DNA of 64,000 nt, from contig NW_027271764.1 in assembly GCF_040938485.1 (NCBI RefSeq), positions 124,001 to 188,000 of the forward strand. Direction: 5' to 3'. Shown in pieces: positions 27,978-51,100 of this stretch; positions within the stretch are counted from its first letter, which is position 1, and each line of letters opens with the position of its first letter. The notes under the pieces were generated by a model. It ran no database searches, was not told the origin of the DNA, and worked only from the letters and a program-made list of their open reading frames with translations. Both the position numbers and the translations under genes were made by a program. The DNA is from Diadema antillarum (taxonomy: Eukaryota).

Positions 27978-28462
27978 TTTTACATGTACTATGTTGATGG
28001 ATACAGATGTGAAAACATAATATTGTGTGTGTTTCTTTTTTCTGAACTTTCAGCCCAATAAGGACGATGGTAATGATGGTTTAAGAGTACTAATTGTTTC
28101 GAGTGCAATTGCTGCACTCAAAGCAGCAAACCAACAGATCATATCAGCGAAATGGTCCAGTACTGACAAATTTACGACAGTTTGAATGTCACTTTGGTGA
28201 TGTAGAATGGTATTTCTTTTTCCTGCGTGGATATGAAACCTCCCTTGCCTCCCATCTGCCTAAATTTGGTAGGCGAAACTAACAAAACGTGCACAGTTTT
28301 GACGAATTTATATGTTGAACAATATGGTTATTCACTTAACTCAGTCTCAAAAACACCGTCACAGATGTGAGATTTTTATATGATGCCTAGTTCGAGACAT
28401 TAGTTGAATGTCCTGATAAATGTCTTACATAATAATGATAACAATAATAATATATACGGTCT

Positions 28463-28685
28463 TTTTTATCCAGGGTAGCCTCTTTATAGTGTTGTCATTG
28501 TTCTACCAGAGGGCCCTGCCATTATCATTATCCAGGAGTTGGCAGGTACCCATTTATACACCTGGGTCGAGAGAGACGTGGTTGGTAAACCCATCTTGTC
28601 CAGGGACGAGAAGCACTGGGCGGGAATCGAACTCGGGTCCTCCGGTTGGGAGTCGGGAGTCTTACCCAGTATGCCACAGCGCCCC
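28463..28685 (-). mobile_element. tRNA-derived SINE, CORE-like
   Basis: Minus strand GGGGCGCTGTGGCATACTGG (A box)...GAGTTCGATTCCC (B box)...CTCTCGACCCAGGTGTATAAATGGGTACC; degenerate copy at ~33833-34030. Confidence 0.7.
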
Positions 28686-29792
28686 TACTATTAGAGTATG
28701 AACATCATTTGTTTTTATATCTTACTAAAATTTCTCACTTTCACTCAGATTTCATTAATGTAAATAGTGTTGTTGTTGTGTCTTTTTCCAAAGTCTACAA
28801 GTGTGCGTTTACTAGATTCGATTATGGTCGCCAGCACACGCATATCATACGATGTGCGGATACATACAAAGAGTCGAGAAGGGAAAAGACTCGAAAAACA
28901 CACTTTCGCTGTCTTACTCAATGTTTATTAGCTGCATAGTTGTACTAGAGAAAACTTGATAATATACAATTAGATATTTCACGTCAATCACTGAAATAGC
29001 TCTGTAAATAAATCAAACATTCACTGATTAATTTCTTTATCTACAAGACAATAAGAAGATGATCATTCAAAAAGCCCGAACAGGGTGCTTAGAAAATGAA
29101 ACCAAAAAGTGCATTATATATTGCTGTTCTGTTAGTTACTATATCCATTACAGTTAGTTTTGTTTTTTACTTTATAAGCAAAACCTCAGAGCTTGTTAAA
29201 AAGACCAACGATCTTCCCGTAGTTATTACCATCTTCACTATCTATGTTAAAGTCTTGAACCGCAAGAATATTAGAAAATGTGATTTTTTTCTTTTGCTTC
29301 CTTTTCATCAGTGCATGAATTCCTGTTAGAAAACACCAGAGTGTCGACAAAATGTTTTCATTATATTAATATTTCACAATTCTACATGCACGCCAAACTC
29401 ACTAATAATGTCAAATATCTCTGCGAGAGCTTCCTTACAAGTTTAAATTTTTAAGGAAAAATACCTCGCTATAAACAACATTGAAGACTATACTATATAC
29501 ATTGAATAAGATTGGTGTGTTATCTCCATAAGTTTAGTCTAATTGGCGTCTTTGAATCTGCTAACGATTGCCTTGTTCACTTGTATTGAGGGATGAATTA
29601 TTTCGCCATTTTTCTTCCGACCAGAGAATGTAAGAATCTAAAGACATGTAAAGAAAAAATAAAATAAAATGGGTGGATTACTGGCAGGTTTGAGTTCTCT
29701 GAGACCCGTCAATGGAAGGGAGTGTCATGTAAAAAGAATAATAGGGGCCTCCATGAGAGGGTAATGGGTATCCGGAGGAAGGGTCCGGAGAT

Positions 29793-30197
29793 TTACATAT
29801 CCGGACGCGACTCCGAGACTTTCGCGGCACGACGCTTCACCTTCCCATTAAAACGAGGGGCGTTCTTCACGCGCTGTGCCTCCAGATCCCGCCGATACTG
29901 TCCGGACTCCTTGTTCTTCAGGCCCGCCGTCATCTTCTGCACGCCGCTGTACATGGCCTCACGGAAGGCTTGTCCGCGGACCTTGGCAGCCGCTTCGCCC
30001 CGGAGCCCCTGGTTGATCATCTCCTTGTAGGCGTTGGCGTGGGCCTGTTTCTTCATGTGTTGGCGGGCGTGGTTGACGGCCGTGGTGGGCAGGCCCCTGT
30101 GGATCTCCTCCATGTCGGCTTTGAACTGCTCACGAGCCTCCCTCAGGCGTTCCTTCTTGTCTTCGAATTCGAGGTCGGCGATGGCTATGTGCTCGAC
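29793..30197 (-). CDS. Secreted protein terminal exon
   Basis: ttccag|VEHIAIADLEFEDKK...ESRPDM*, 405 nt. Confidence 0.85.
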   Translation of the reverse strand, partial: VEHIAIADLEFEDKKERLREAREQFKADMEEIHRGLPTTAVNHARQHMKKQAHANAYKEMINQGLRGEAAAKVRGQAFREAMYSGVQKMTAGLKNKESGQYRRDLEAQRVKNAPRFNGKVKRRAAKVSESRPDM

Positions 30198-33098
30198 CTG
30201 GAATATTCAGACGTGAACAAAAACACCTTGAAAAACAAATGCGATGCAGTAATGCACAATGAATTCATTTCGTTATTTAACGACCTTCCAAGTCATTGTC
30301 AAAAGTGGTGGTTCGTTCCCTTATAAGCTTTGTTCCCGAATCATTGGGTGCACGTCACGAGTTCGACATCCATGAATCATACAGTCTACAAGTCATTCGG
30401 CCCATTAGTCATACAGCCCACAAGTTATACATCCCAAGTGTCATACAGCCAATGAGTTCGACACTAAGCAAACGACGCCCAAGAGACCGACACATTAAGT
30501 TCCGTGTTGTCATGTCGAACTCGTAGACTGTATGACTCATGGACCTTTTTTTTTCACTGTCGAACTAGATGACTCGACGTGGGTGTCGGCCTCGTGGGAT
30601 GACTTACCCGAATTATTACATTATAGTATAGGCATCATTTAGATAACAACCGATCACGTTCACATGTACACGTCATTGGTACAGTCGTCATCACCATCAT
30701 CATCATCATCATCATCATCCACCATCAGCGTTTCGGTATCTTTTGGGGTATTTGCTCTTTTATGTTGTTTATTTATTTCCTTCCCACCCTAAGAGTCAAT
30801 CGTAAATGACAATAATACTGATATAATCTGCAACGCTGGTGATTATGACGTTAACATACATTTCGCCACGGGTGCGTGTCTAAATAAGAATAATAAAAAC
30901 AAGAATTAGTATCGTCGTCGACGTCGTTCCCGACGTCGAAACGTACCTGTCTGACGAGCTCCTTCCGTCTGGTCTCGACGGGTTCGATGGGCGAGGAGTG
31001 GAGGAGGGCCTTGGGTAGGATGGCGTGGGGTCCCATGTACATCATGGCGTGCTCACGGAGTTTGTGGAGTTCCTTGGCCTTCTCTTCGTCACTCATTGAG
31101 TAGTCCTCCTTGATCTCCATGGCGCGCTTGATGAACTGACCCTGCTTCTCCCGCAGCTTCGATTTATCCCACTTGGAGGGGCCATGGTGTTCCGTCACCT
31201 CATCCTGATGGAGTGGTGGAAAAAAGAAGAAGTGTAAAGCAAACTTCTCAATCTTAAGCACAATGCCCACTGTGCGACCTGAGCCTGCGAGCTTATGGCG
31301 AGCTGGTGCGAGCTTTATGAGGCGCCAAGTGTCGCGTGGCCTATTTCGTTACGAAATCAGTCATTTCGTCGACGAAATTTTGATTTTGTTAACGAAATGA
31401 TCATTTCGTTACGAAGTGACTGATTTCGTAACAAAATAGGATATGAGACACTTGAGTTTATCTTATTCATACACGGATCAAAAGCCTGCTTTCGGCTAGA
31501 CAGTTGTTGTTGTTTTTTTCAGCAAGGCCGTGTTTTACATCGAATAACAAATCATACACATTACGAAAATGCAAATGAAGAGCTGGTATTCATTTTCATC
31601 TTATCTTTGTATCTCATGTCATCTTGTCTCATTACATTTCATTCGTTCTAGAAATTGGATTCACCTAAAAGAGCAACGGGAGAAGCAAGAAAATGGCTTA
31701 CAACTTGACTATGATGAGGTTTAGATGTCACATTATCATTTTATGCTCCATTTTACAATAAAGATGTTTATTAATAATCACATCATGTATATGTATTCAG
31801 TATCACTAATATTCATTGGAAATTGAAAGGACTGCACAACAAGCACTTTGGTTTAGCATATACGTTGTCTGGATAAGGAAAGAGAACGGGCAAAACAAAA
31901 AAAAAACAACACAACACCATCAGAGAGTATAAAGCGAGTTCGGGCTTCAAACTGAACACAGACAAAGAGATCAAGTTAAAGGGAAGGCAAACCCAAAGAG
32001 CAATGTGGATTGAGTGAAAGCAGTAACATTAGTAGAACACATCAGTGAAAGTTTGAAGAAAATCGGACAATCGATGCAAGTGTTATGAATTTTTAAAGTT
32101 TTGGTGTTGGTACCGCTGGATGAGGAGACTACTAGAGGTTATGACGTATGAGTGGACAACAATATAAAGAAATATAAAGAAAATTCCTCAAAAATTCATT
32201 TTTCATGAAAATTACAAATTCCATGAACTTGATACTGACAAAAGGGTAGCAATTATTCCCCCTGCTTTCTGAAAGCGGTTAGTCAAGTGCTCTTTCATAA
32301 TGCTAGAAAAGAAAATTTTTTGTTGAATTTCATTTATATTTTCTTTGTATTGTTGTCCACTCATACGTCATAACCTCTAGTAGTCTCCTTATCCAGCGGT
32401 TCCAACACCAAAACTTTAAAAATTCATAACTCTTGCATCGATTGCCCGATTTTCCTCAAACTTTCATTGGTGTGTTCTACTAATGTTGCTGCTTTCACTC
32501 AATCCACATTGCTCTTTGGGTTTGTGTTCCCTTCAAAGCCATAGCTAGGAAATCTTGTTAGAACAACTGGCTGCCGACCTACGTAAAAGGGAGTCATATT
32601 GTGCTTTCCATAGATTCACACGATATGCCGAATGTATAGGCTATATTCTGGCGTGATGGGATTACTGACACAAACTGTACGAGGACATTTTGAAGGTCTC
32701 TTTTCTGAAGTCAATAGACAGATTTAAAGTCAGACAATCATTGATTGAGCAGGAAAAATAGTGTTTGTGAGAAGTGTAAGAACGTACCGCAACATTTAAC
32801 CTTGTGCCTACAATATACTGCAATTACATTATTTTTTCACAAAAAGTGAAACCTTGCGCACTACGAATATAGTATGCAGAATGAGTTGCAAATCGCTGTG
32901 CAGATATGCCATCGATTTTTGTTGGATTTGTTTGTTTGTTTGTTTGTTTGTTTGCTTGCTTTTTAAGAATACCTATAGTGACTCGTCAATGTATTCCTTA
33001 GCCACAGATTTAGCGGTATAGATAAAGTTTAAAGAGTGCACTCTTCTTGCTGTTGTTGTTGCCCTGACATGACAGACTTAGTAAGAAGTTCATCTGTG

Positions 33099-33136
<38 letters not shown>

Positions 33137-36100
33137 TGTGTGCGTGTATGTGTGTATGTGTGTGTGTGTGTGTTTCGGGGTTGTCATCCCTCAAGGCCGA
33201 CACCACGAGTCATACCGCCCATCGAGCTCGATATTGAAAAAAAGGCCCATAAGTCAAACGGCCAACCAGTCATACAGCCCATGAGTTCGAAGTTCGAAAC
33301 TAGGAAAAGAAGGACCATGAATCCTTAACTAGGTAAACAAGACCCACGAGTTTGATACTAGGCAAAAACGGCCCACAAGACCTGCATTAGACCCTACATC
33401 ACGAGACTTAAATGTGTCGGTCTCGTGGGCCTTATTTGCCTGTAATTATAGTGTCGAACTCAGGGGCCTTATTTATTTAGTGTTGAACTCATGGGCTGTA
33501 TGACTCATGGGTTGTATGACTCACGGGCTGTATGACTAGTAGGCTGCATGATTTGTGGGCGTCGAACTCATGTCTTGCACCCGTGTTTTCTTCAATGCAT
33601 GGATTTCAATTTCGTGAATTGACTTGTTTTTATGTGCATTAACATTGCTGCTGGGTGGTAGCCCTTAACGGCGTAGGATTTTTACGTATGGCCTTGTCGT
33701 ATTTTGCCTTGCCATTACTTTTATCGCACGAGATGCCTTACAGTACCATGAGTGAAATATCAATCATGAAAACCGCTGCGTGTTAAGATAGTGTCGGGAA
33801 AAATACACGAGATAATAAATGATAATTATGTTCTTCTTTTATCCAGGGTATAGCCTCTTCAGTGTCGCCACTGCTCTACAATATTGAGCGCTGCCATTAT
33901 TAGTACAATTTGTACCCTGGTGTTGCCATGTTTCCATTCTCCGCCTGACTTGAGAGGGACCTGGTGGGTAAAAACATCTTGTCCGTGCACTTGACGGGAT
34001 TCGCAACTTAAGAGTCATGAGTCTTATCGACTATTACGAATTATGCAACAGTTCCTCCAAACTGTTGAGAGATATGACAAGCTAATCGCGAAACGTGACA
34101 TAATCTAATGTTAAATTACACCGTTCAACAATTAGGAATGAAGGCGACGAGTAGTGCATGCGTGAAGAAATAAATATCAAGCAATTTCTATGCGTGTATT
34201 GATTGCAGTCATTTTTTTTTCATACACGTTTGGTGTGCCGAATAGTGTTGTAATGTTTGCCAAACATCAACTACGATGGCAGATGTTCAGTCAATCGTCC
34301 ATTTCTCTTCAAACAAGCCTCTCTGACGTCTAGGAACAGTTAGATGGGGGAGGGTTAATGCTGCTCTTCAACGTTTTGTTTCAGTCGCTACTGGTGATCC
34401 GATGATGGAGTTTCTGTTCAGATCTCTTCATACATCCCTGTTCTTACTAGACACTTTCCCTTGTATACTTTGTCATGTCTTTCATTTTTTTTTTTTTTGG
34501 CAAGCGGCAATGTTATCAATATGATTTTTCTTTTGGCCTGGATTCCGTAAGATTGCTTTGAGGTTATTGTTATTATTTTTTTTAATTCATGTTCCATATT
34601 CCACATTTCATACTAGTCTTATATTCCATTTGATTTGAAGCAGAAATGTTTTTCACACAATGGTCAGTTTGAACCAATAATGCACAAATGTATAAGGACA
34701 TATAATTGACGTGTAATATGAGGAACCCACTAACAAGCAAAGCTTGTAGGATGTGGGCTCCAAAAATATAACATAGGGTTTTAGTACAGTATATCAATGT
34801 CAGAAGTGACGTAACATGCAAAAATACAAGATATCGAGAATATTACAAAGTTTACGGGATGTACAAAGTATAGTATATAATGTTTATGATTAACTTATGG
34901 TATAAATGCTAAGAAAAGTAGCAAGTTGATCAAACTAATGAAGTCATCCGAGCGAGGCATCATTTGAGTATGCAAAAATTTTTCAAGTGATTACGGCAAA
35001 AATAATTAAACATAGGATTTTAGAAAATTGGCTTTGAGATTTTTCTCAAAGGAGCTTAAAGAACTTGAGTGCAACCGAACCGAATCTAACTCATTCCAGA
35101 AAGAAGGGCCGGTCGATGTAATTGTCTTAAGGGCTAAAACTGTACGAACAAGGGAAAATGATAGGATTCACTGTGTCTTGTAGGGTAAGTATGAATATCA
35201 CTGTTTTTCACAAACATTGAGGAAAATATACTAGGACGGTCACCAGTATTCAACTTATACATGAAAATTCCAACATGATACAAATACAAATCAGTAATTT
35301 TTAACAATTTACTTGAAACAAACAATTCATCAGTGTGATCAAAAAATTGTGCTCGATTTATAATCCGCAAGGCCTTTTTCTGAACCAAAAATAACGAATC
35401 AATTTTAGTCTTTGAGCAATTCCCCCAGGCTAATATTCCGTAATTCAAGTAAGGTAATAATAAAGTTGTATAAAGAGAATGCAATATTGGCTTTGGGAAG
35501 AGATATTTCAGTTTGTGAATAATTCCAACATTCTTGCACAACAATTTACATAAATAATCAACTTGTACCTTCCATGAAAGGTTACTGTCAATATGAATAC
35601 CTAAAAATTTTGTTGAATCTATTTGATTTAACTGTAAACCGTTCATTAAAACTAAACCTGGAAGAGATTTTATTGTGTTACTGAAAACCATATAATTGGT
35701 CTTATTTATGTTAAGCGACAATTTATTTGCCTGAATCCACTCAAACACCAACTTAAGTTCATTATTCAAAGTATCGAGCAAAACATAAGGATCTGAGTGA
35801 GAATAAAAGAGACTTGTATCATATGCGAACAGAAGAAAAGACAGCAGAGAGGATGAGTTCCGGAAGTCATTGATGTATAAAATGAATAAAAGAGGACCTA
35901 AGAAGGAGCCCTTGACATCGGCTAGAGTTTGTCTGTCTGTCCGTTTAATTTTGCCGATGTTTTTGAAAATGAGGTATACACGATGTCATTACTCTGTACA
36001 GAAAATGTAGAAAAAATATTTAAATAAACCGATCTTTCCAACCGTCAGCAACGGCTAATCATCAATTTGCAGTTATCTTGTGCAAATGATGTTAATGTCA

Positions 36101-37119
36101 TATCTGCGTGACATTGCCTACTGTTTTAAATATACAAAAGTATTTCAGCAGCGTCTTCGAACGACTGCGTCAAAAGTGCGTCATTATTAATTTCAATCAA
36201 GGGGCACGACAGCCAGTTTACATCTTAATGTCCGCATGATATGTGTCCATATGAAAACTGGACACCATGCTGTATACTAGTATTCAATCCGCCGTTGTGT
36301 CGTGAGACATAGTATGTGCATACCCAAGATGTGGACATTAAACTTAATGGTTAAATTTAGGCTTGTCAACAAGCCTAAAGTGGCTTGTTAACAAAATTAA
36401 GATTGATTCGATCTATTCCTGAGTTACTTCAAAGTAGTCCCTACCTGATCAAATGATCAAAAAAGTATGTCTTTTCTTCCAAATTCGTTGAATAGACTTT
36501 GATACACTATCTCCCGCACTGAGAAACAGCGACAGTTCCGATTATAACAAACTGACAAAATAAACCTAGTCTTTTTTTTCTAAGGAGTAGTACAGTATTA
36601 TGAATAACGTTTATGATTTATAGCCCTCTAGCCTTATGTTGATATACCATGCAGTAAACTAATCATTGTTTGAAGTTTCTAAAATGGTTGAAAATTCATT
36701 ATTTGAAGGAGATACCACATCCTAATGATCAAATTAGGTCTACGGATTTCTTTGGGTTTTGATTTTTCAATATGACCCAATTTGCTCGAATACCTCATGT
36801 CGGTAAAAAGATGAATTGTCTGATCCTATGAATAGCATTTGAAGAAACGTAAAAAAAAAAACACGGAAATATTGTTCCCAACATGGAAGATAAAAATGTT
36901 TATCGCAGTTTAGCAGATGTTATCAGGGGCAAGATGGCGATTATTGATTGGTTAAGAGCTGACGTCTTACGTATCATACGTATAGTTCTTGGCACAGGAT
37001 GTACATGCCAAACATGGCAGTCAAACTGGTCCAGGACTTACCTCTTTTTGGGGTGGTCCCGCCGCTAAAACAATTGACACGAAGCCAACCAAGACGGCTA
37101 GGAAAATCCAGGCCTTCAT
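29793..37119 (-). CDS. Uncharacterised secreted protein, ~246 aa, 3 coding exons
   Basis: Exons 37119-37042 (MKAWIFLAVLVGFVSIVLAAGPPQKE|gtaagt), 31204-30947 (86 codons), 30197-29793 (134 codons + TAA); all phase 0 with canonical splice sites and GC-rich coding-like codon use. Joining exon 1 to exon 2 across a 5.8-kb intron is an inference. Confidence 0.7.
30345..30610. mobile_element. CGGGT...ACCCG MITE family E
   Basis: Internal GAGTCATACAGCCCA/GAGTTCGAC repeats; flanks AATCAT/AATTAT. Confidence 0.65.
30947..31204 (-). CDS. Secreted protein exon 2
   Basis: catcag|DEVTEHHGPSK...KELVRQ|gtacgt, 258 nt. Confidence 0.85.
31321..31462. mobile_element. Palindromic TTTCGT(T)AACGAAA-repeat MITE
   Basis: GGCGCCAAGTGTCGC...GAGACACTTGAG termini; internal repeats of ATTTCGT(T)ACGAAAT. 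Confidence 0.6.
31976..32536. mobile_element. TTAA MITE family D with ~200-bp TIRs
   Basis: GGGAAGGCAAACCCAAAGAGCAATGTGGATTGAGTGAAAGCAG... and reverse complement at right end. Confidence 0.8.
33085..33172. repeat. (TG)n microsatellite
   Basis: Direct reading. Confidence 0.95.
33176..33583. mobile_element. MITE family E, long copy
   Basis: Same internal repeats; flanked by TGTTT on both sides. Confidence 0.7.
33833..34030 (-). mobile_element. Degenerate copy of the CORE-like SINE
   Basis: Shares TTTTATCCAGGGTA..GCCTCTT..AGTGT 3' end and AAACATCTTGTCC with 28463-28685. Confidence 0.55.
35134..35900 (-). mobile_element. CR1/L2-clade LINE fragment (RT thumb / C-terminal region, 215-aa open stretch)
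   Basis: NKLSLNINKTNYM, STKFLGIHIDSNLSWK, LPYLNYGILAWG, QKKALRII, HTYPTR; lies in intron 1 of the secreted-protein gene. Confidence 0.85.
37042..37119 (-). CDS. Secreted protein exon 1 (signal peptide); exon acceptor at 37140
   Basis: ttcctccag acceptor, aaagATG, hydrophobic core, gtaagt donor. Confidence 0.7.
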
Positions 37120-38059
37120 CTTTGTACCCTTAATCTAGATCTGGAGGAATAAGAACAGGAGTAGACTTTTCTGTAGAATCTCCAGCGATAGTCAAGGTCC
37201 TAGCGACGCAATGTGCCAGGCATCCAAGCTACTGCTCCTCACTCTTTGTGCCGAAAGAGAGTGTGGCTCAAGCAACCCAGATCCTTTGAGGACAAAGATC
37301 GACAAAAAACTCAAAGAAAAAAAAGAGAGAAAGCAACGAATGGAACCCTCAACGCGAGACGGTACCGAGATACACGAAAGAAAGGCGGTGATCGATTAGT
37401 ATCGATCGAAAGCCACATCACTATTCAGTGTCTACGGGCTGCACATAGCAAGTTTTAAGATACAGACAAATTGCCCTTCTTTCTGACAGTTGATGGTTTC
37501 CAAACTAATCATAACGGCATGTAGTAGCCATCATGTGCTATTTAAGTATTTAGATTATTGCTCGTGATACATTACAGCCATTTATGTCATCAAGGCTGAT
37601 GATCTACTGCTCAACAATTCCGCAAACTTATGAAATTATTGGTCAGCCTTTGGTTTTATTTCTTCGTTTTTGCTTAATGTTCATTCTGAAATTTTGGGGA
37701 AAATGAGACCCAATCAGTCATGTACCTACTTCTTTAAAGCAGTGGGCTGCAATTCAAAACCCCAATTTATGGAGACCATCCCATCGAGATGGTTTTGGTA
37801 TATGGTTGAAATTCCGTCGAAATTTAGGAGAAAGCATGGTATGGACAATGTTGGTTATAATAATAACCAAAGGAGATGGCAATTCAGGGGTAGAGAAAAC
37901 AATCGGCAGTAATCTGGCGGAACTTCGTATCCTCTTTTTCCCATTTCGCCAGAAATCGGCTTTTAAAGATTCAATGTTACACCTTTCTAAACTAAGTTAC
38001 GATGAGTTGCATTTTTTTTCTTTTCTTGGTCATATTGGTCTAAAACAATCAGTTATCAG

Positions 38060-45100: not shown

Positions 45101-48100
45101 ACCACTCAAAATTTGTGTGTGTATGACTCTTGCATAAGTCAATCATGATCACTGATGTCTTGTAGATACAGTTATTCATAACAAGAATGTTGACATCAGG
45201 ATATGTTATGTTACTATTTATTTGTATTGATTCTGTTCAAAATCATATTTTGGCCCTACACATCCCAAAAGGAGGTGATTATATGCTTCATTAACCCTAT
45301 TTTTTTGCAGGGTAAGAATCATAACTTGACCATGAACCTGCAGACGCGTCGCACATGGTGTTACGCGTGCGAGCGAGAGGCGTTCCCCAACGTCCTTCTC
45401 CCCGATCGGGCCCAGATGGCGGTGCCCGATCACGTGACCAAGCGGCACATCAGCGTCCAGGAGACCGAGCGCGTGGCACAGCAACGACACCATCACCATC
45501 ACCAGCACCAGCATCAGCACCGCTATCACCATCATCATCACCAGCACGCCAGCCAGCGGGGGAAAGAGGATGAGGGTACAGGTGATGAGGAGGAGGCAAT
45601 GGAGCACTCTGGGGCAATGACAGGCCAGGAACACTACTCCCAGTGAGTATTGGGGGATAGGTACAAGTATAAGACACTTATTTGCCCAAGCAGGCCTTTT
45701 GCAATGGTTATGATGGGAGGGGAAAAATGAATAGAAATAGCCAGTGAGAAATTAGTACATGTAAGAATGACACCTTCAATGATTATGACCAAAAAAATCT
45801 TTTCTTGTACCACATATCTCCTTTTTAGTTTCTTTCTTTTTCCAGATATGGTTTGTTCAAGGTTAAGGTGTCACTGGATGAAGTGTTTATAATCTGTCCA
45901 AGAATTTTGATGGTGAATTTATCTGATGGCACTTGGCAGAACTTGTTTTTGAATTGAGTCAAAGCAGAACAATTACCTAAGAAAATGTTTTCATGCAGTT
46001 AAAGATATAGAGAGGAAAGGTCCACTTCTAAGTGGAAATGTGTTCCATATTTAACATGTCGTTGGTGATAAATAAAAAGCAAACAATGCAGTAGAATATC
46101 CAACGTGACAGTCACGAAATTCTAAAGTTTCACACATTTTCCCAGAAGAGTGTCTAAACAGCTTCTCCCAAGCAAAACTTTACTCCAGCTCCACAAGAAA
46201 ATGAAACATTTTTTTTCTTGTGTTGGATACATGTACCTTGGAATTCTTTCTTGTACAGTGCACTCCAGTTATAACTAACATGGTTATAACAAAATACCGG
46301 TTACAACGAAATAAAAATTCAGGCGGCAACATTATCCTCTCGTTGTCTTTTTTTGTTTATTTGTTCAAACAAAATTTCGATTTAACTAAAGAAAAGTGCC
46401 AGTCCAGAGGACTTCATTATAAAGGGAGTCCACTAAAGCAACACTCTCCCATGACTATATAGCCTCATACTACAGAATTGTTATGTCTCTGTCCCAAACT
46501 AGGATTCCAAGTTTCCGCACCGTCAACACTCCAGTCACCCAGGCTCTGGATGAGATCGCCCTAGATGACACCAAACCGAGAGGTAGGGCGTGATATCAAG
46601 TATTATATTCCACACACTAAGAATCTTGCTATAGGACTGGTCAAGAGCTGATCATGTGATGAAGCGTAGTTTTGCCCATCACATCACCTGAGAAGAAAAG
46701 TTTGTTACACTCTATGTTGATAGTCCCTTTTTTTTCGCTGATCTCCACACAGTCCACACAGTCCTAACGCAAGATGAGTGCGCGCGAAATAAAAGTGCGT
46801 TGCACTGTGGACTATCATGTGATCTAGGTCACTTGATAGTACACAGTGCAACGCACTTTCACTTCGGTGCCGCGCGGTGCGCGCAGCAAATTCATTGTTT
46901 TGTCATCTGCGCGCACACGTAGCCTAAGCCCTAAGGATACCTAAAGACAGCTAAAACGGTTTCAGATGTGGAATAAAATGGGAATTTCTAGGACCCTAGA
47001 TGTGGAATATAAAGCAAATAATCAACTTTCAGTTTCAGGCAATGAGACAAACTATCACTTCCTCGGGGATCTGAATGTGTACGCTATCTTTCCTCTGCTG
47101 CGCTTCGGAAAGATAGCTACATCCAGATCGCCTCGGAAGTGATAGTTTGTCCCATCACCTCCAATTTGCGAAAAGTTCATGCTGCGAAAAAAATGTTGCT
47201 TTACAGTACTTGAAGTGTAGTTGGCTTGTTTGTGCGCACTGAACTGTTAAATCATAAAGTTCCAGAGCAGGATATATAGTTACAGTAATGGCATGGTGGC
47301 AAACTAGCATAACGATAGTGGTGGTGGTACTTTCACTTGTGACACGATTTGTACTGATGCTAATAGATCTTACATGATTTTACATTATCATTATGCACAT
47401 GGCGTTATAGTGTATACAATGTACATTACCAAGCAAGGAAATATGTCAAATTTGATACATCTATTCAATTCTGCTTGATTTTGTTCCATAAGGACTAACT
47501 GGGCTTAGAAACTTGGGAAATACATGCTATCTGAACTCTGGTATCCAAGCTTTGTCTAACTGGTAAGTTGTTGTTATTTAATTTGCTTTCTTTATCCTTT
47601 TTTTAATGTCATGATAGTGTTTGTTGTTGCTGTTGTTGTTGTTGTTGTTTTAATGATTGTGTTACCCAGTTATATAACTGTGTATTCAGGGTGTGTTTGC
47701 ATTACTTCTGTTGAAGTTGATAACATTTACAAATCACTTTACCTGTATTGCATTTTTTGTTTGTTTAGAAAAAGAGCGGAAAGCAGAACTTACAAACAAC
47801 ACTAAGACAGATGTTAATACATGCTGAGAAATTCTTAGTCACTGAAATACTGACCCTACCTTTTAAGTCATGGAAATCATTAACACTGTGCAAAGAGTAA
47901 AAGTAGTTTAGATGATTCTTGGATATTAATTATGTAAAAAAATGTAATGTTGTCTTACTTGTGTAACAAAATGATCACCCAAACAAAAGTCATCATATTA
48001 GTTTTTCCCAGTCATGTGTGTGTGTGTGTGTGTGTGTGTGTATGAATGGTGCATGTATTATGATTTTTTTTCTTTTGTATTCTTTGTGCAAATTCCAAAT

Positions 48101-51100
48101 TAGGTGTATTTTAGGTATTTCCCTTTTTTATTATTGTTTCTTAGCTTTTGCATAAGATCATCATTTCAGATATGAATTTATATGATTGGTAAAAAAAATA
48201 CCATTATGATATTCAGGATTTTTTTATTGTTTCATTGTTGAATTACTGGGACAAAAGCAAGTAACGATTGTGGAAATATGAATGATGATCATATGATATT
48301 AGAAAGAGATCCTTCGTTTTCATTGTCCCTGTGTGTGCAGCCCTGCATTCACCCACTTTTTCTTGGAGTGCAATGGATTTGTGAAGACAGAGAAGAAGCC
48401 CTACCTCGGGGCCTCATATCAACGACTCATGGAGGACATTTGGGGGCGGAAAAGGTGAGGAGAAAACCTTCTAATTTTTATTTGAAAATAAAGTCTAATT
48501 TGTGTTTTATTCTTCCACCCCCAAAATATGACAGAGACATCATGTTTTCTCAGGGTTTTCTGCCTACAACGTGTCTATCGTTACACCACAAATCTTGTTC
48601 TGTTGTGTTATTTGGCATGTTTTCTAATGTTAGCTCATAGCGTTACCTTGTCAGTAATTGATTCAGAGAATTACTATTACAGGGCACTCCCAACAAATTT
48701 TGTTACAGCAAGGAAAAAATTCAGGTTCCAAATTTATTAAGTGCAAAATTCTCTTTGGTTAGTGCAAAATTTTGAGATATGGAAAGAAAACTGCTGGTCC
48801 TGAGGAGTATGTTACAACAGAAGTTGCTTGTACAACAAAGATAGATGGACACAATATTTTAGGAATGTTTGTCCTTCCTTGGCTTATTTTCTTCAGTCTG
48901 TTTTTAATTTCATTTAATGCCTGTGTATGTTGTTATGTTAACAATTGTTGTGTTTTCCTTGTCTTATTTTTTATCCCCTTCAGGCCAAGCTACATGACCC
49001 CATCGAGCCTCGTCAACAGTTTCAAGGCAGTGTTTCCTATGTTCAAAGGATTCACACAACAGGTAGTTAACTTTCTGACACTGTTTTATGTGCAAAACTC
49101 ATGCCTGGACAATGATGTAGCTACTGATCATTTGATTAAAAGTCATCGTAGATCTGTGATAAAACTTTAACATCAAAGCAAAGCTTTGCATATTCTCAAC
49201 AGCTGTGCTCATTGCATGTACAGCGTAACAAAAATCTATAAAAACTTGCATAGATTTGAAACACGGAATGTTTACCCAAAGCATGCTTTCGTTGCGGTCT
49301 CTAAACAATTTGTCACACAGCGGTATTCTACAATGGCGCATAAAGAGTTAAAAACCGCTGCTTGTATTTGATCGGCACTCCCCCACTAACTTTGAAATGA
49401 AAAAGATTTTTTTTTAGTGCAAAAGAGGACTTTGATGTCTGGTGTTTGATGTTTGACATAGAATCAGGGTTTTCATCATCACTCATTTCTTTAATCTTGT
49501 CTCATTATCAGGATTCTCAAGAATTCTTGCGCTGCATCATGGACAGACTCCACGAAGAACTCAAGGAGCCAGTCTTTGTCGAGAGCGATGACGCAGTCGA
49601 TGACAGTCGGCCTACCACAGCTACTGATGGCAATGCGGACAAGGACCCAAACCCTCGGCGACGCATGCGGGCAGGCTCGCCTTCCCTGGATGCATACCAC
49701 CGGACGCGCTCCAACGACTCGCTCACCTTGTCGGAGGACATGGAGATGGAAAGTCTCCCGGACAACGATGCGGCCCAAGCCCAGATGATGGAGAGTGCCG
49801 AGGAGCGCATCCCACTCCACCCAGGAGCATCATCTGCCCATGGAGAGGAGATGTTGACCCCGCCCCCCAGAGGTCACGGGGTGGACAAGAATCACCCGCA
49901 CAGAAAGAGGGCGTCGGATTCCACCTCAGAAACGGAGCCCCTCAATCCCAACCCAGCTCCAACCAGAGGTGAGAATGTCTGAAATGCAATGAGCAAGATT
50001 TATCATGTTCTGTATGTGCCTTCTCTTTTCAGGCTATGTCTTGGTCATTTATTGGCATTCAATATTCCTGTATATGCCATATTATAGTATACAAATATTC
50101 AATGTGTATGAGTTCAATGGTTCCTTATATTACATGAGCATGCTAGTTTAACCATTCTATTCAAGGGCGCAAAGTGAGGTTGAATAGAACGGTGAAACTT
50201 GCTGTGCAGGCTCACTTGATTTACCATTTAATAGATGTCTATTGCACTGCCATTAAGAGTGAGCATGGGATAGCTGATTCTTCTTATTGTCATATGGCCT
50301 GCTTTCATCCAGTCAGATTGCAAGGATCTATACATGTGTTGTATAATATGCAATAATGTAGTGTAATAATATGCAATTTATTTTTGTGATTGTAATCAGT
50401 ACACCAATAATTTTGAAATCAGACATTTGCAGAAAAACCTCCTCCTGTAACAGATGTGCATTATAAATCATCACAAAACTGGGAAATTGCCGACCTGAAT
50501 AGGGAAATACTTACATCTCATTCTGCACTGTGGTTCTTCATCAAGAATTCAATGGCCTGTAAAACTGTCTTACAAGTCCAGTAGCCTGAAATATTATGCT
50601 CATGAAATATATTATCATACAGTTACACATCCTAAAATATATGGCATATATTATGAACACTAATACAGTGATTTATACCATCTACCTACATTTCTTGGCT
50701 GATGCTTTGACAAATTCTAGTAGCCAGATGCATCATCTCTTACAAGTGGTCCACATGTTAGCCTCACGTAATCATTTTGTGATACTTAGATTACTTGAAG
50801 AACTGTTTTAGATATCAGACCAACCACTCACAAAAATGTCATACTCTGTAACTGCTAGTCATGCTCTGTAATCATACATTCGTAATTATACATGTAGTCG
50901 AATCATACATCATGATACATGTATTTTTACTCTGTATGTGTGGCACTATAAGTCTGCAGACTTTCTGTTATGCTCTCTTTTGAATTGCAGTAAAATCGAA
51001 ATTGAATTGAATTGAATAACAAGTCCCATTTACGAATACAAGGTGTATACAGTATCGATGTGAATTGTTAACTGAATGTGGATGAACATACTAAAAGGAA

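What the first reader, a model, noticed from the sequence alone, without database searches (positions are those of the whole stretch)
29793..37119. Orphan secreted, cysteine-free helical protein whose signal-peptide exon is missed by the ORF track
Seen: a 78-nt minus-strand exon (MKAWIFLAVLVGFVSIVLA-AGPPQKE) splices in phase 0 to two strongly coding-like exons, giving ~246 aa rich in K/E/R/A/H/M with no Cys and no family I recognise. Inference: a lineage-specific secreted protein (extracellular matrix, gland, gamete, immune or lipid/metal carrier).
Basis: partly seen in the sequence, partly recalled or inferred. Interest (0 to 1): 0.7.

Follow-up and report, generated by a model that had tools for sequence, protein, structure and literature searches.

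The report
Sea-urchin-only secreted protein gene
This is a real three-exon gene of the sea urchin Diadema antillarum, already annotated publicly as an "uncharacterized protein"; it encodes a small, cysteine-free, probably secreted protein found only in sea urchins, and nobody has studied its function.

Summary
Three minus-strand exons (37119-37042, 31204-30947, 30197-29793) have GT-AG, phase-0 introns. They translate to 26 + 86 + 134 residues.

The gene is neither unannotated nor a one-species orphan. NCBI protein XP_071507833.1 (D. antillarum, "uncharacterized protein", 246 aa) equals the three exon translations in order, letter for letter.

Orthologues of 245-247 aa exist in D. setosum, Lytechinus pictus, L. 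variegatus and Strongylocentrotus purpuratus. At least three unnamed species also carry it, on intronless cDNA-like contigs. These contigs, and identical intron positions in L. pictus, support the exon 1-exon 2 join.

An exhaustive search with exon 3 against 1.84 billion representatives found only this family. Pfam, PDB, the ESM Atlas and fold searches gave nothing significant. No paper mentions the gene ids.

The mature protein is 227 aa, about 26 kDa, basic, 37% charged, with no Cys. AlphaFold gives two moderately confident helical hairpins (37-147) and a poorly defined C-terminal half.

The gene is single-copy. The second copy on contig C490 is the other haplotype. It is under purifying selection but evolves fast.

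Function remains unknown. My best guess is a soluble extracellular binding protein, possibly trimmed at an invariant KRR. No RNA run was listed.

The parts
37042..37119 (-). Coding exon 1 (78 nt, 26 codons). It holds the start ATG at 37119-37117, a 19-aa signal peptide with predicted cleavage after V-L-A19, and the first 7 mature residues. The donor GT is at 37041-37040.
   Evidence: It is identical to residues 1-26 of P0007. It is conserved in position and size (78 nt) in L. pictus. Signal-peptide features are kept in 8 orthologues.
31205..37041 (-). Intron 1 (5837 nt, phase 0). It contains a (CA)n run near 33030-33190 and a haplotype-specific insertion at 34569-35912.
   Evidence: There is no conservation with the L. 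pictus intron.
30947..31204 (-). Coding exon 2 (258 nt, 86 codons). It is the most conserved part (66% identity to L. pictus). It holds predicted helices 37-58 and 65-83 and the invariant block LREHAM..MGPHA.LP.AL.
   Evidence: L. pictus also has a 258-nt exon here.
30198..30946 (-). Intron 2 (749 nt, phase 0, GT-AG).
   Evidence: The same position is seen in L. pictus and in S. purpuratus-type Logan contigs, which read ...cacag|GTCGAA.
29793..30197 (-). Coding exon 3 (402 nt plus TAA stop). It holds helices 100-147 and a low-confidence C-terminal half with the invariant blocks AYK.MI..G.RG and G.QK.TAG.KNKE.G. It ends with KRR followed by a conserved 11-residue tail.
28924..28929 (-). Candidate polyadenylation signal AATAAA, about 865 nt after the stop codon. 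This is tentative.
   Evidence: It was read. Orthologue cDNA-like contigs carry 3' UTRs of up to 1021 nt. There is no transcript evidence for this species.

Best explanation
The window holds the Diadema antillarum allele of a single-copy, echinoid-restricted gene, publicly annotated as XP_071507833.1, 'uncharacterized protein'.

Shown:
- Three coding exons with phase-0 GT-AG introns give a 246-aa pre-protein.
- The same exon structure and the same spliced mRNA occur in other sea urchins.
- The gene is under purifying selection but diverges fast: 52% identity between Diadema and camarodont urchins.
- It has no detectable relative outside sea urchins and no paralogue in this genome.

Inferred:
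- The first 19 residues are a cleavable signal peptide.
- The product therefore enters the ER and leaves the cell as a soluble 227-aa, 26-kDa, basic (pI 9-9.7), cysteine-free protein. It has no N-glycosylation sequon, no membrane anchor and no KDEL-type signal.
- It has a core of two alpha-helical hairpins (residues 37-83 and 100-147), followed by a flexible, helix-prone basic half.

Speculative, about 25-30% likely:
- It is a non-enzymatic extracellular binding protein of embryos or larvae.
- Conserved helix faces form the core.
- The basic C-terminus, K-R-R-A-x-[KR], fits the XBBBXXBX heparin-binding pattern. It may dock onto polyanions such as sulfated glycans or acidic matrix.
- The invariant KRR may also serve as a convertase cleavage site that releases the conserved 11-residue tail.
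For: Gene model:
- Sequence and splice sites.
- P0007 is identical to the exon translations.
- The genome is GCA_040938485.1. Its size of 1,754,659,819 bp is given both and in PMC13511894. It was annotated by NCBI's pipeline.

Spliced form in relatives:
- Intronless ORFs with UTRs lie on JGI and Logan contigs.
- L. pictus exons are 78/258/399 nt with the same phases.
- The intron 2 acceptor is seen in S. purpuratus-type contigs.

Restriction to echinoids:
- phmmer with exon 3 against 1.84 billion representatives gave only 2 hits, both from this family.
- Word and profile searches found only echinoid proteins.
- The family tree follows echinoid phylogeny.

Single copy. PMC13511894 says both haplotypes are retained in this assembly.

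Selection:
- Haplotype dN/dS is 0.10.
- Interspecies dN/dS is 0.08-0.39.
- Coding divergence between haplotypes is 1.48%, against 3.35% for non-exonic sequence.

Signal peptide: all 8 orthologues meet the (-3,-1) rule and have a 15-17-residue uncharged run.

Physico-chemistry.

Helices:
- AlphaFold pLDDT is 72-88 over roughly residues 40-150.
- Conservation has a 100-degree periodicity in 4 of 5 segments.

The invariant KRR and the conserved tail.
Against: - There is no transcript or protein evidence from D. antillarum itself. No RNA run was listed, so the junctions rest on the public model and on orthologues.
- The signal peptide was judged by rule only, not by a trained predictor.
- The charge-hydropathy plot puts the mature protein on the disordered side.
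- AlphaFold mean pLDDT is only 59-60, with pTM 0.26-0.42. A defined fold is therefore uncertain.
- The polyanion-binding idea rests on one short motif. That motif is equally a dibasic processing site or simple basic composition.
- No expression site is known. Larval expression is inferred only from contigs that look like plankton metatranscriptomes, and I could not check their sample descriptions.
Confidence: 0.6

Rival explanations
1. It is a pro-protein of the regulated secretory pathway. It would be cut at conserved dibasic sites (105-106, 126-127, 161-162, 214-215, 233-235) into bioactive peptides. Alternatively it could be a 7B2- or proSAAS-like convertase partner whose C-terminal peptide is released after the KRR.
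For: Five dibasic positions are basic in all nine full-length orthologues. KRR 233-235 is invariant and is followed by a conserved 11-12-residue tail, A-x-[KR]-x-S-x-S-x-P-D. The protein has a signal peptide, no Cys, is about 26 kDa, and is partly disordered. From general knowledge, this overall build resembles 7B2 and proSAAS.
Against: Conservation is spread over the whole protein. It is strongest in blocks that are not flanked by basic pairs, such as LREHAM..MGPHA and G.QK.TAG.KNKE.G, unlike typical neuropeptide precursors. There is no amidation Gly and no repeated peptide. In a protein with 21% K+R, basic pairs arise readily by chance. No Pfam hit to granin or 7B2 families was found.
Confidence: 0.15
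2. It is a histidine/methionine-based metal-binding carrier for Cu or Zn, using the invariant H73, H78, M80, M83, H86 block and the N-terminal His.
For: Five His and three internal Met are invariant across about nine orthologues. Most lie in the single most conserved block, H-A-M-x-x-M-G-P-H. A weak sub-threshold Pfam match to the cation-binding Ani s 5 domain appears in one member.
Against: No recognised metal-binding family or fold was matched. The Ani s 5 match scores 14.7 bits against a 29.3-bit cutoff and falls outside the His/Met block. The motif sits in a predicted loop of lower confidence. No coordinates were available to check the geometry.
Confidence: 0.08
3. It is an exchangeable-apolipoprotein-like lipid or membrane binder made of amphipathic helices.
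For: It is secreted, Cys-free, rich in A/E/K/R/L and helix-prone. ApoLp-III (1aep) and the apoE N-terminal domain (1ya9) appear among weak Foldseek rows.
Against: The mean helical hydrophobic moment is no higher than in shuffled sequences: 0.232 against 0.232 +/- 0.026. GRAVY is -1.1. The Foldseek E-values are 3.2-3.4 with TM no higher than 0.29, so these are generic helical matches. No Pfam apolipoprotein hit was found.
Confidence: 0.05
4. It is not secreted. The N-terminal hydrophobic stretch would be an uncleaved signal anchor, or the protein would stay in the ER or Golgi as an escort or chaperone, RAP-like.
For: Signal peptide cleavage is only inferred. The His-rich, Lys-rich, Cys-free helical build recalls the LDL-receptor chaperone RAP (general knowledge).
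Against: The hydrophobic run is only 15-17 residues, with conserved small residues at -3 and -1. That is typical of cleaved signal peptides. There is no KDEL- or HNEL-type C-terminus; the sequence ends ...RPDM. No Pfam RAP hit was found.
Confidence: 0.1
5. Exon 1 does not belong to this gene, and exons 2-3 are joined to another first exon.
For: There are no RNA reads from this species. A strong acceptor-like tract directly upstream of the ATG (37160-37141) shows that the 5' end of the transcript is not settled.
Against: The public model uses exactly this exon. All orthologue cDNA-like contigs read signal peptide, then AGPxQxE, then DEVT without interruption. L. pictus has a 78-nt exon 1 with the same donor phase. 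Exon 2 has no in-frame ATG before residue 29 of the exon, and it has a strong acceptor.
Confidence: 0.02

Closest known systems
Echinoid orthogroup of 'uncharacterized proteins': S. purpuratus LOC115929330 (XP_030853958.1), L. variegatus LOC121428932, L. pictus LOC129277626, D. setosum XP_072176270.1, D. antillarum XP_071507833.1
   Same: They align collinearly over the full length (245-247 aa). They share the signal peptide, the mature N-terminus AGPxQxEDEVT, the invariant blocks and the three-exon, phase-0 structure. The window encodes the D. antillarum member exactly.
   Different: Nothing structural differs. Diadema is the most divergent named member, at 52% identity to camarodonts. No member has a published function.
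Nematode SXP/RAL-2 (Ani s 5-like) proteins, Pfam PF02520
   Same: Both are small, secreted, cysteine-free, all-helical lineage-restricted proteins. They share a local helix-[ND]xx[LM][ST]xxEK-helix motif at residues 50-77.
   Different: The match is below threshold (14.7 bits against 29.3), occurs in 1 of 10 members and covers only 28 residues. That is not homology evidence. The phylum and protein length also differ.
Neuroendocrine convertase partners 7B2 and proSAAS (general knowledge)
   Same: Both have a signal peptide, are about 21-27 kDa and are largely disordered or helical. Both have a short conserved C-terminal peptide after a basic cleavage site.
   Different: No sequence or Pfam similarity was found. 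The 7B2 Cys pair and Pro-rich motif are absent. Cleavage is untested. proSAAS is known only from vertebrates.
Exchangeable apolipoproteins (apoLp-III 1aep, apoE N-terminal domain 1ya9)
   Same: Both are secreted helical proteins poor in Cys.
   Different: Foldseek E-values are above 3 with TM no higher than 0.29. There is no excess amphipathicity. The protein is strongly hydrophilic.
SpTransformer (Sp185/333) immune proteins of sea urchins (general knowledge)
   Same: Both are echinoid-restricted, secreted, cysteine-free and disorder-prone, with the leader on its own exon.
   Different: SpTransformer genes form a clustered multigene family with two exons and Gly- and His-rich regions. This gene is single-copy, has three exons and no such regions. 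I made no direct sequence comparison.

Membership tests
Echinoid LOC115929330 / LOC129277626 orthogroup (uncharacterized, no Pfam entry) | Collinear full-length alignment to the named members | tested here: met
   Identity is 52-53% to the Lytechinus and Strongylocentrotus proteins over 245-247 aa, and 97% to D. setosum. There are 44 invariant columns. Profile E-value is 7.9e-116.
Echinoid LOC115929330 / LOC129277626 orthogroup (uncharacterized, no Pfam entry) | Three coding exons with phase-0 introns after ...Q-x-E and before V-E | tested here: met
   Window exons are 78/258/402 nt and L. pictus exons are 78/258/399 nt. The intron 2 acceptor is seen in S. purpuratus-type contigs.
Echinoid LOC115929330 / LOC129277626 orthogroup (uncharacterized, no Pfam entry) | N-terminal signal peptide followed by AGPxQxEDEVT, with a Cys-free mature chain | tested here: met
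SXP/RAL-2, Ani s 5-like (PF02520) | Score at or above the Pfam gathering threshold | tested here: not met
   14.7 bits against 29.3, in one member only.
Proteobacterial lipase chaperone (PF03280) | Score at or above the Pfam gathering threshold | tested here: not met
   The best score is 20.3 bits against 25.7, over 43 residues, in 4 of 9 rows. I read it as a compositional or capping-box match.
Exchangeable apolipoproteins | Amphipathic helices, seen as a high helical hydrophobic moment | tested here: not met
   The observed mean muH equals the shuffled mean; 241 of 500 shuffles reach it.
Exchangeable apolipoproteins | Fold match to an apolipoprotein helix bundle | tested here: inconclusive
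   1aep and 1ya9 appear only at E 3.2-3.4 with TM no higher than 0.29. The query model itself has low confidence.
RAP / LRPAP1 ER escort protein | Pfam RAP domains and a C-terminal HNEL/KDEL-type retrieval signal | tested here: not met
   No RAP family appears among the Pfam matches, even at E up to 5. The C-terminus reads ...SRPDM.
Prohormone or convertase-partner pro-proteins (7B2, proSAAS, neuropeptide precursors) | Conserved basic cleavage site flanking a conserved peptide | tested here: met
   KRR 233-235 is invariant and is followed by the conserved A-x-[KR]-x-S-x-S-x-P-D tail. This is necessary for membership but not sufficient.
Prohormone or convertase-partner pro-proteins (7B2, proSAAS, neuropeptide precursors) | Actual proteolytic processing, and expression in neuroendocrine cells | not testable with these tools
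   No peptide or expression data were reachable.
SpTransformer (Sp185/333) | Clustered multigene family with two-exon genes | tested here: not met
   A profile search of the whole genome finds only the two allelic copies. The gene has three coding exons.

The most novel reading that the evidence does not exclude
The family founds an undescribed, echinoid-born class of secreted helical-hairpin proteins with a specific extracellular or secretory-pathway role. Two examples are a larval matrix or polyanion-binding factor, or an invertebrate functional analogue of proSAAS/7B2 that is activated by cleavage at the invariant KRR. Either would tie a gene born de novo or diverged beyond recognition to an echinoid-specific trait.
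Probability: 0.2. Interest if true: 0.55.

Novelty: already known. Interest (0 to 1): 0.27.

Why it matters
For genome annotation it adds nothing. The exact 246-aa model is already in RefSeq, and orthologues are annotated in four other sea urchins.

Its value is as a clean example of a taxonomically restricted gene:
- single-copy, constrained, apparently expressed, and conserved across euechinoids;
- no Pfam family, no solved or recognisable fold, and no literature.

S. purpuratus and Lytechinus are injectable, CRISPR-ready models. A simple localisation and knock-down experiment could therefore assign a first function. Until then it is one of many uncharacterized lineage-specific secreted proteins.

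Tried and rejected
- RNA evidence: the look-up of sequencing runs listed no RNA run, so read laying could not be used. None was listed, which does not mean none exists.
Exons were searched separately by reference. The joined form was examined only through P0007, a database protein returned by a search.
- Word search with exon 3 alone found nothing. This was a length-window artefact, because the 246-aa relatives exceed 1.75 times 134 aa.
- ESM Atlas: no usable hit for exon 3 or for P0007.
- Pfam: only sub-threshold helical or compositional matches to Med11, Lipase_chap, ANIS5, DUF445 and others.
- PDB sequence profile: only the Rabin8 coiled coil, at E 0.011.
- Foldseek against PDB: nothing below E = 1.
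- VIA wide search: best Z 7.5 over about 50 residues, which are generic helix hairpins.
- AlphaFold on exon 3 alone gave no compact fold, pTM 0.26, so I did not search with it.
- Internal repeat between the exon 2 and exon 3 parts: hhalign probability 3.8%, rejected.
- Charged single alpha-helix: i,i+4 opposite-charge pairs are not enriched, 10 against 14.6 +/- 3.2, rejected.
- Microsynteny with L. pictus within 10 kb either side: none detectable.
- Literature: gene ids, accession numbers and short peptide words gave no relevant paper. Seven papers were asked for supplements. The supplements held for five had no occurrence, and two papers had no files held.
- JGI sample ids were not found in any paper.
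- The first related-loci run failed because the alignment had partial rows. It was repeated with A2.


Full report
**1. The observation**

I read the minus strand directly.
- An ATG at 37119 opens a 78-nt exon that ends GAG|gtaagt at 37042/37041.
- A long pyrimidine tract and CAG precede 31204. That exon runs 258 nt to CAG|gtacgt after 30947.
- ...attccag precedes 30197. That exon runs 402 nt to a TAA at 29795-29793.

The translations are 26, 86 and 134 residues, and both introns are phase 0. The exon-1 frame is open for only 37 codons, so a stop-to-stop ORF list with a 40-aa floor does not show it. The mature chain has A25 E27 K26 R21 H11 M11 and no Cys.

They were searched one by one, by reference.

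**2. Whose genome, and is the gene annotated?**

The assembly behind the window has 1,754,659,819 bases in 2963 contigs. PMC13511894 gives exactly that size for Diadema antillarum GCA_040938485.1. It explains that this assembly retains both haplotypes: the haploid estimate is about 703 Mb and 84.4% of BUSCOs are duplicated. The preprint 10.64898/2026.05.24.727502 says it was annotated by NCBI's eukaryotic pipeline.

A profile search returned P0007, "uncharacterized protein [Diadema antillarum]", 246 aa, XP_071507833.1. Its sequence is, letter for letter, the exon 1, exon 2 and exon 3 translations in order. The signal-peptide exon is missed only by an ORF list.

**3. Support for the splice junctions without reads from this species**

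The indirect evidence is strong.
- (a) Orthologues sit as uninterrupted 738-741-nt ORFs, with 5' UTRs of 74-157 nt and 3' UTRs of up to 1 kb, on short JGI and Logan contigs. These are L009, L010, L012, L013, L022, L024, L025 and L026. The genomic genes have two introns, so these contigs are spliced mRNA. All read signal peptide, then AGPxQxE, then DEVT without a break.
- (b) The L. pictus gene (L011) has exons of 78, 258 and 399 nt. Its donors are GTGAGT and GTAAGT, and its introns fall at the same codons and in the same phase.
- (c) Logan contigs carrying the S. purpuratus-type exon 3 show ...cacag|GTCGAA at the intron 2 position.
- (d) A tblastx of the 24-kb L. pictus locus against the window finds only the three exons.
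- (e) Exon 2 has no in-frame ATG until residue 29 of the exon, and it has a strong acceptor. It therefore cannot be a first coding exon of a comparable protein.

**4. Copy number and selection**

Exon and profile searches of the whole genome find exactly two collinear copies, C876 (the window) and C490. They differ at 11 of 741 coding positions (1.48%), of which 8 are synonymous and 3 non-synonymous, giving dN/dS of 0.10. Non-exonic positions differ at 3.35%. The copies also differ by kilobase-scale indels in intron 1. Given the published haplotype retention, C490 is the other allele.

Between species, synonymous sites are saturated (pS 0.59-0.75), so ratios are rough, but dN/dS stays between 0.08 and 0.39. 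The family tree follows echinoid phylogeny, with one gene per species. Protein identity between Diadema and camarodonts is only 52%. The gene is constrained but evolves fast.

**5. Relatives**

An exhaustive phmmer search with exon 3 against 1.84 billion representatives gave two hits, both from this family. Word and profile searches plus cluster look-ups add several members:
- XP_072176270.1 (D. setosum)
- LOC129277626 (L. pictus)
- LOC121428932 (L. variegatus)
- LOC115929330 / A0A7M7PNQ0 (S. purpuratus)
- three unnamed lineages from environmental contigs

All named entries are called "uncharacterized". Nothing was found outside echinoids.

One caveat applies. The exhaustive search used exon 3 only. 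The better conserved exon 2 domain was covered only by the word-limited profile search.

**6. Known families and folds**

- Pfam gives only sub-threshold matches. The best are Lipase_chap at 20.3 bits against a 25.7 cutoff, and ANIS5 at 14.7 bits against 29.3. Both fall on the same 40-residue helix-cap-helix stretch.
- A PDB profile search gives only a coiled coil, at E 0.011.
- The ESM Atlas gives nothing.
- AlphaFold2 with a 10-row alignment gives mean pLDDT 59 and pTM 0.42. Helices 37-58, 65-83, 100-118 and 123-147 reach pLDDT 72-88. The signal peptide, the mature N-terminus and everything after about residue 165 are poorly defined.
- Exon 3 folded alone is one long low-confidence helix, pTM 0.26.
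- Foldseek against PDB has no match below E = 1.
- The index-free VIA search tops out at Z 7.5 over about 50 residues. By the tool's own calibration this is just a helix hairpin.

**7. Sequence features bearing on mechanism**

- All eight full-length orthologues have a 19-20-residue N-terminus with a 15-17-residue uncharged run. V or A sits at -3 and A or S at -1, directly before the invariant AGP. This is the classical cleaved signal peptide pattern.
- There is no later hydrophobic segment, no KDEL-type end and no N-glycosylation sequon. Cys appears only inside the Lytechinus signal peptides.
- The mature chain is 26 kDa, with pI 9.0-9.7, GRAVY about -1.1 and 33-38% charged residues. It lies on the disordered side of the charge-hydropathy boundary.
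- Conservation nevertheless shows alpha-helical periodicity in four of five segments. Eight Gly and six Pro are essentially invariant. This argues for defined helices and turns rather than a featureless coil.
- Amphipathicity does not exceed shuffled controls. There is no excess of i,i+4 salt bridges and no internal repeat.
- The conserved landmarks are as follows.
  - An S/T-x-E/D at residues 64-66, in the loop of hairpin 1.
  - H73, H78, M80, M83 and H86 in the most conserved block.
  - AYK.MI..G.RG.
  - G.QK.TAG.KNKE.G.
  - An invariant KRR (233-235), followed by A-x-[KR]-x-S-x-S-x-P-D.
- The segment [x]KRRA[AV][KR][x] fits the XBBBXXBX heparin-binding consensus (general knowledge). It is also a dibasic convertase site.

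**8. Most likely mechanism and its rivals**

I am confident of the following:
- It is a real, expressed, single-copy echinoid gene (about 0.97).
- Its product enters the secretory pathway and is released as a soluble, non-enzymatic protein (about 0.8).

What it binds is open. My preferred reading, at about 0.25-0.3, is an extracellular binding protein with a two-hairpin core and a flexible basic tail that engages polyanions. The tail may be trimmed at KRR.

The rivals are:
- a processed pro-protein or convertase partner (0.15)
- an ER or membrane-retained protein (0.1)
- a His/Met metal binder (0.08)
- an apolipoprotein-like lipid binder (0.05, disfavoured)
- a wrong exon 1 (0.02)

Several full-length cDNA-like contigs come from one JGI project series and from a Logan run. 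This suggests appreciable expression in planktonic stages. I could not verify the sample descriptions, so this remains an inference.

**9. Literature**

No paper in the searchable library contains the gene ids, accession numbers or short peptide words from the conserved blocks. I asked seven sea-urchin omics papers for supplements. The supplements held for five had no occurrence, and two papers had no files held.

**10. Verdict**

- The interpretation "lineage-specific secreted protein" is supported.
- "Orphan" must be read as "echinoid-restricted family", not "species orphan".
- The model is already public.
- It is an ordinary, though clean and experimentally tractable, uncharacterized taxon-restricted gene.

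Interest is 0.27.

Noticed in passing
G000:C490:146777-155409 (L005/L006), against window 29793-37119: A second collinear copy of the whole gene is present. It has intact splice sites, 11 coding differences and 3 amino-acid changes (R to K, G to S, T to A, all in exon 3). It is most likely the other haplotype of this uncollapsed assembly.
   Followed up: yes
window 34569-35912 (ORF 35134-35781, minus strand): A 1.3-kb stretch in intron 1 carries a 215-aa ORF that looks like the C-terminal part of a non-LTR retrotransposon reverse transcriptase. That reading is my own; Pfam gave no hit at E 0.01. The stretch is absent from the C490 copy, so it is a polymorphic insertion. Conversely, C490 has about 2.3 kb extra (149423-151752), flanked by inverted matches.
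   Followed up: partly
window 37141-37160 (minus strand): A pyrimidine tract ending in CAG lies 22 nt upstream of the start codon and looks like a splice acceptor. The CCAG is kept in the C490 copy. The coding 'exon 1' may therefore be preceded by an untranslated exon. There is no transcript evidence for this species.
   Followed up: no
L014:110-481 (JGI contig, protein P0002): This contig fuses the start of the signal peptide (MDSRIIFAVLALF...) out of frame to ...RNLPAADV of exon 3. It is either an aberrant splice or deletion form, or an assembly chimera, in an unnamed relative.
   Followed up: partly
L023 (JGI contig Ga0314678_10110128): This is a further variant of the P0001-type transcript. 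Its ORF stops after 95 residues, although tblastn matches the whole protein. That suggests a frameshift or a sequencing error.
   Followed up: no
window 45203-49982 (plus strand): Exon-like ORFs here have weak zf-UBP and UCH matches. This is a ubiquitin-specific protease gene, the upstream neighbour on the opposite strand. L. pictus instead has a SET-domain gene upstream, so local synteny is not kept.
   Followed up: partly
window about 33030-33190: A (CA)n/(TG)n microsatellite lies inside intron 1. It generates spurious Cys/Val- and His/Thr-rich ORFs on both strands.
   Followed up: no
window about 28600-28720 (minus strand): A tRNA-like stretch with a B-box-like ...GAGTTCGATTCCC... lies downstream of the gene. 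ARAGORN calls no tRNA in 28000-38000. It may be a tRNA-derived SINE.
   Followed up: partly
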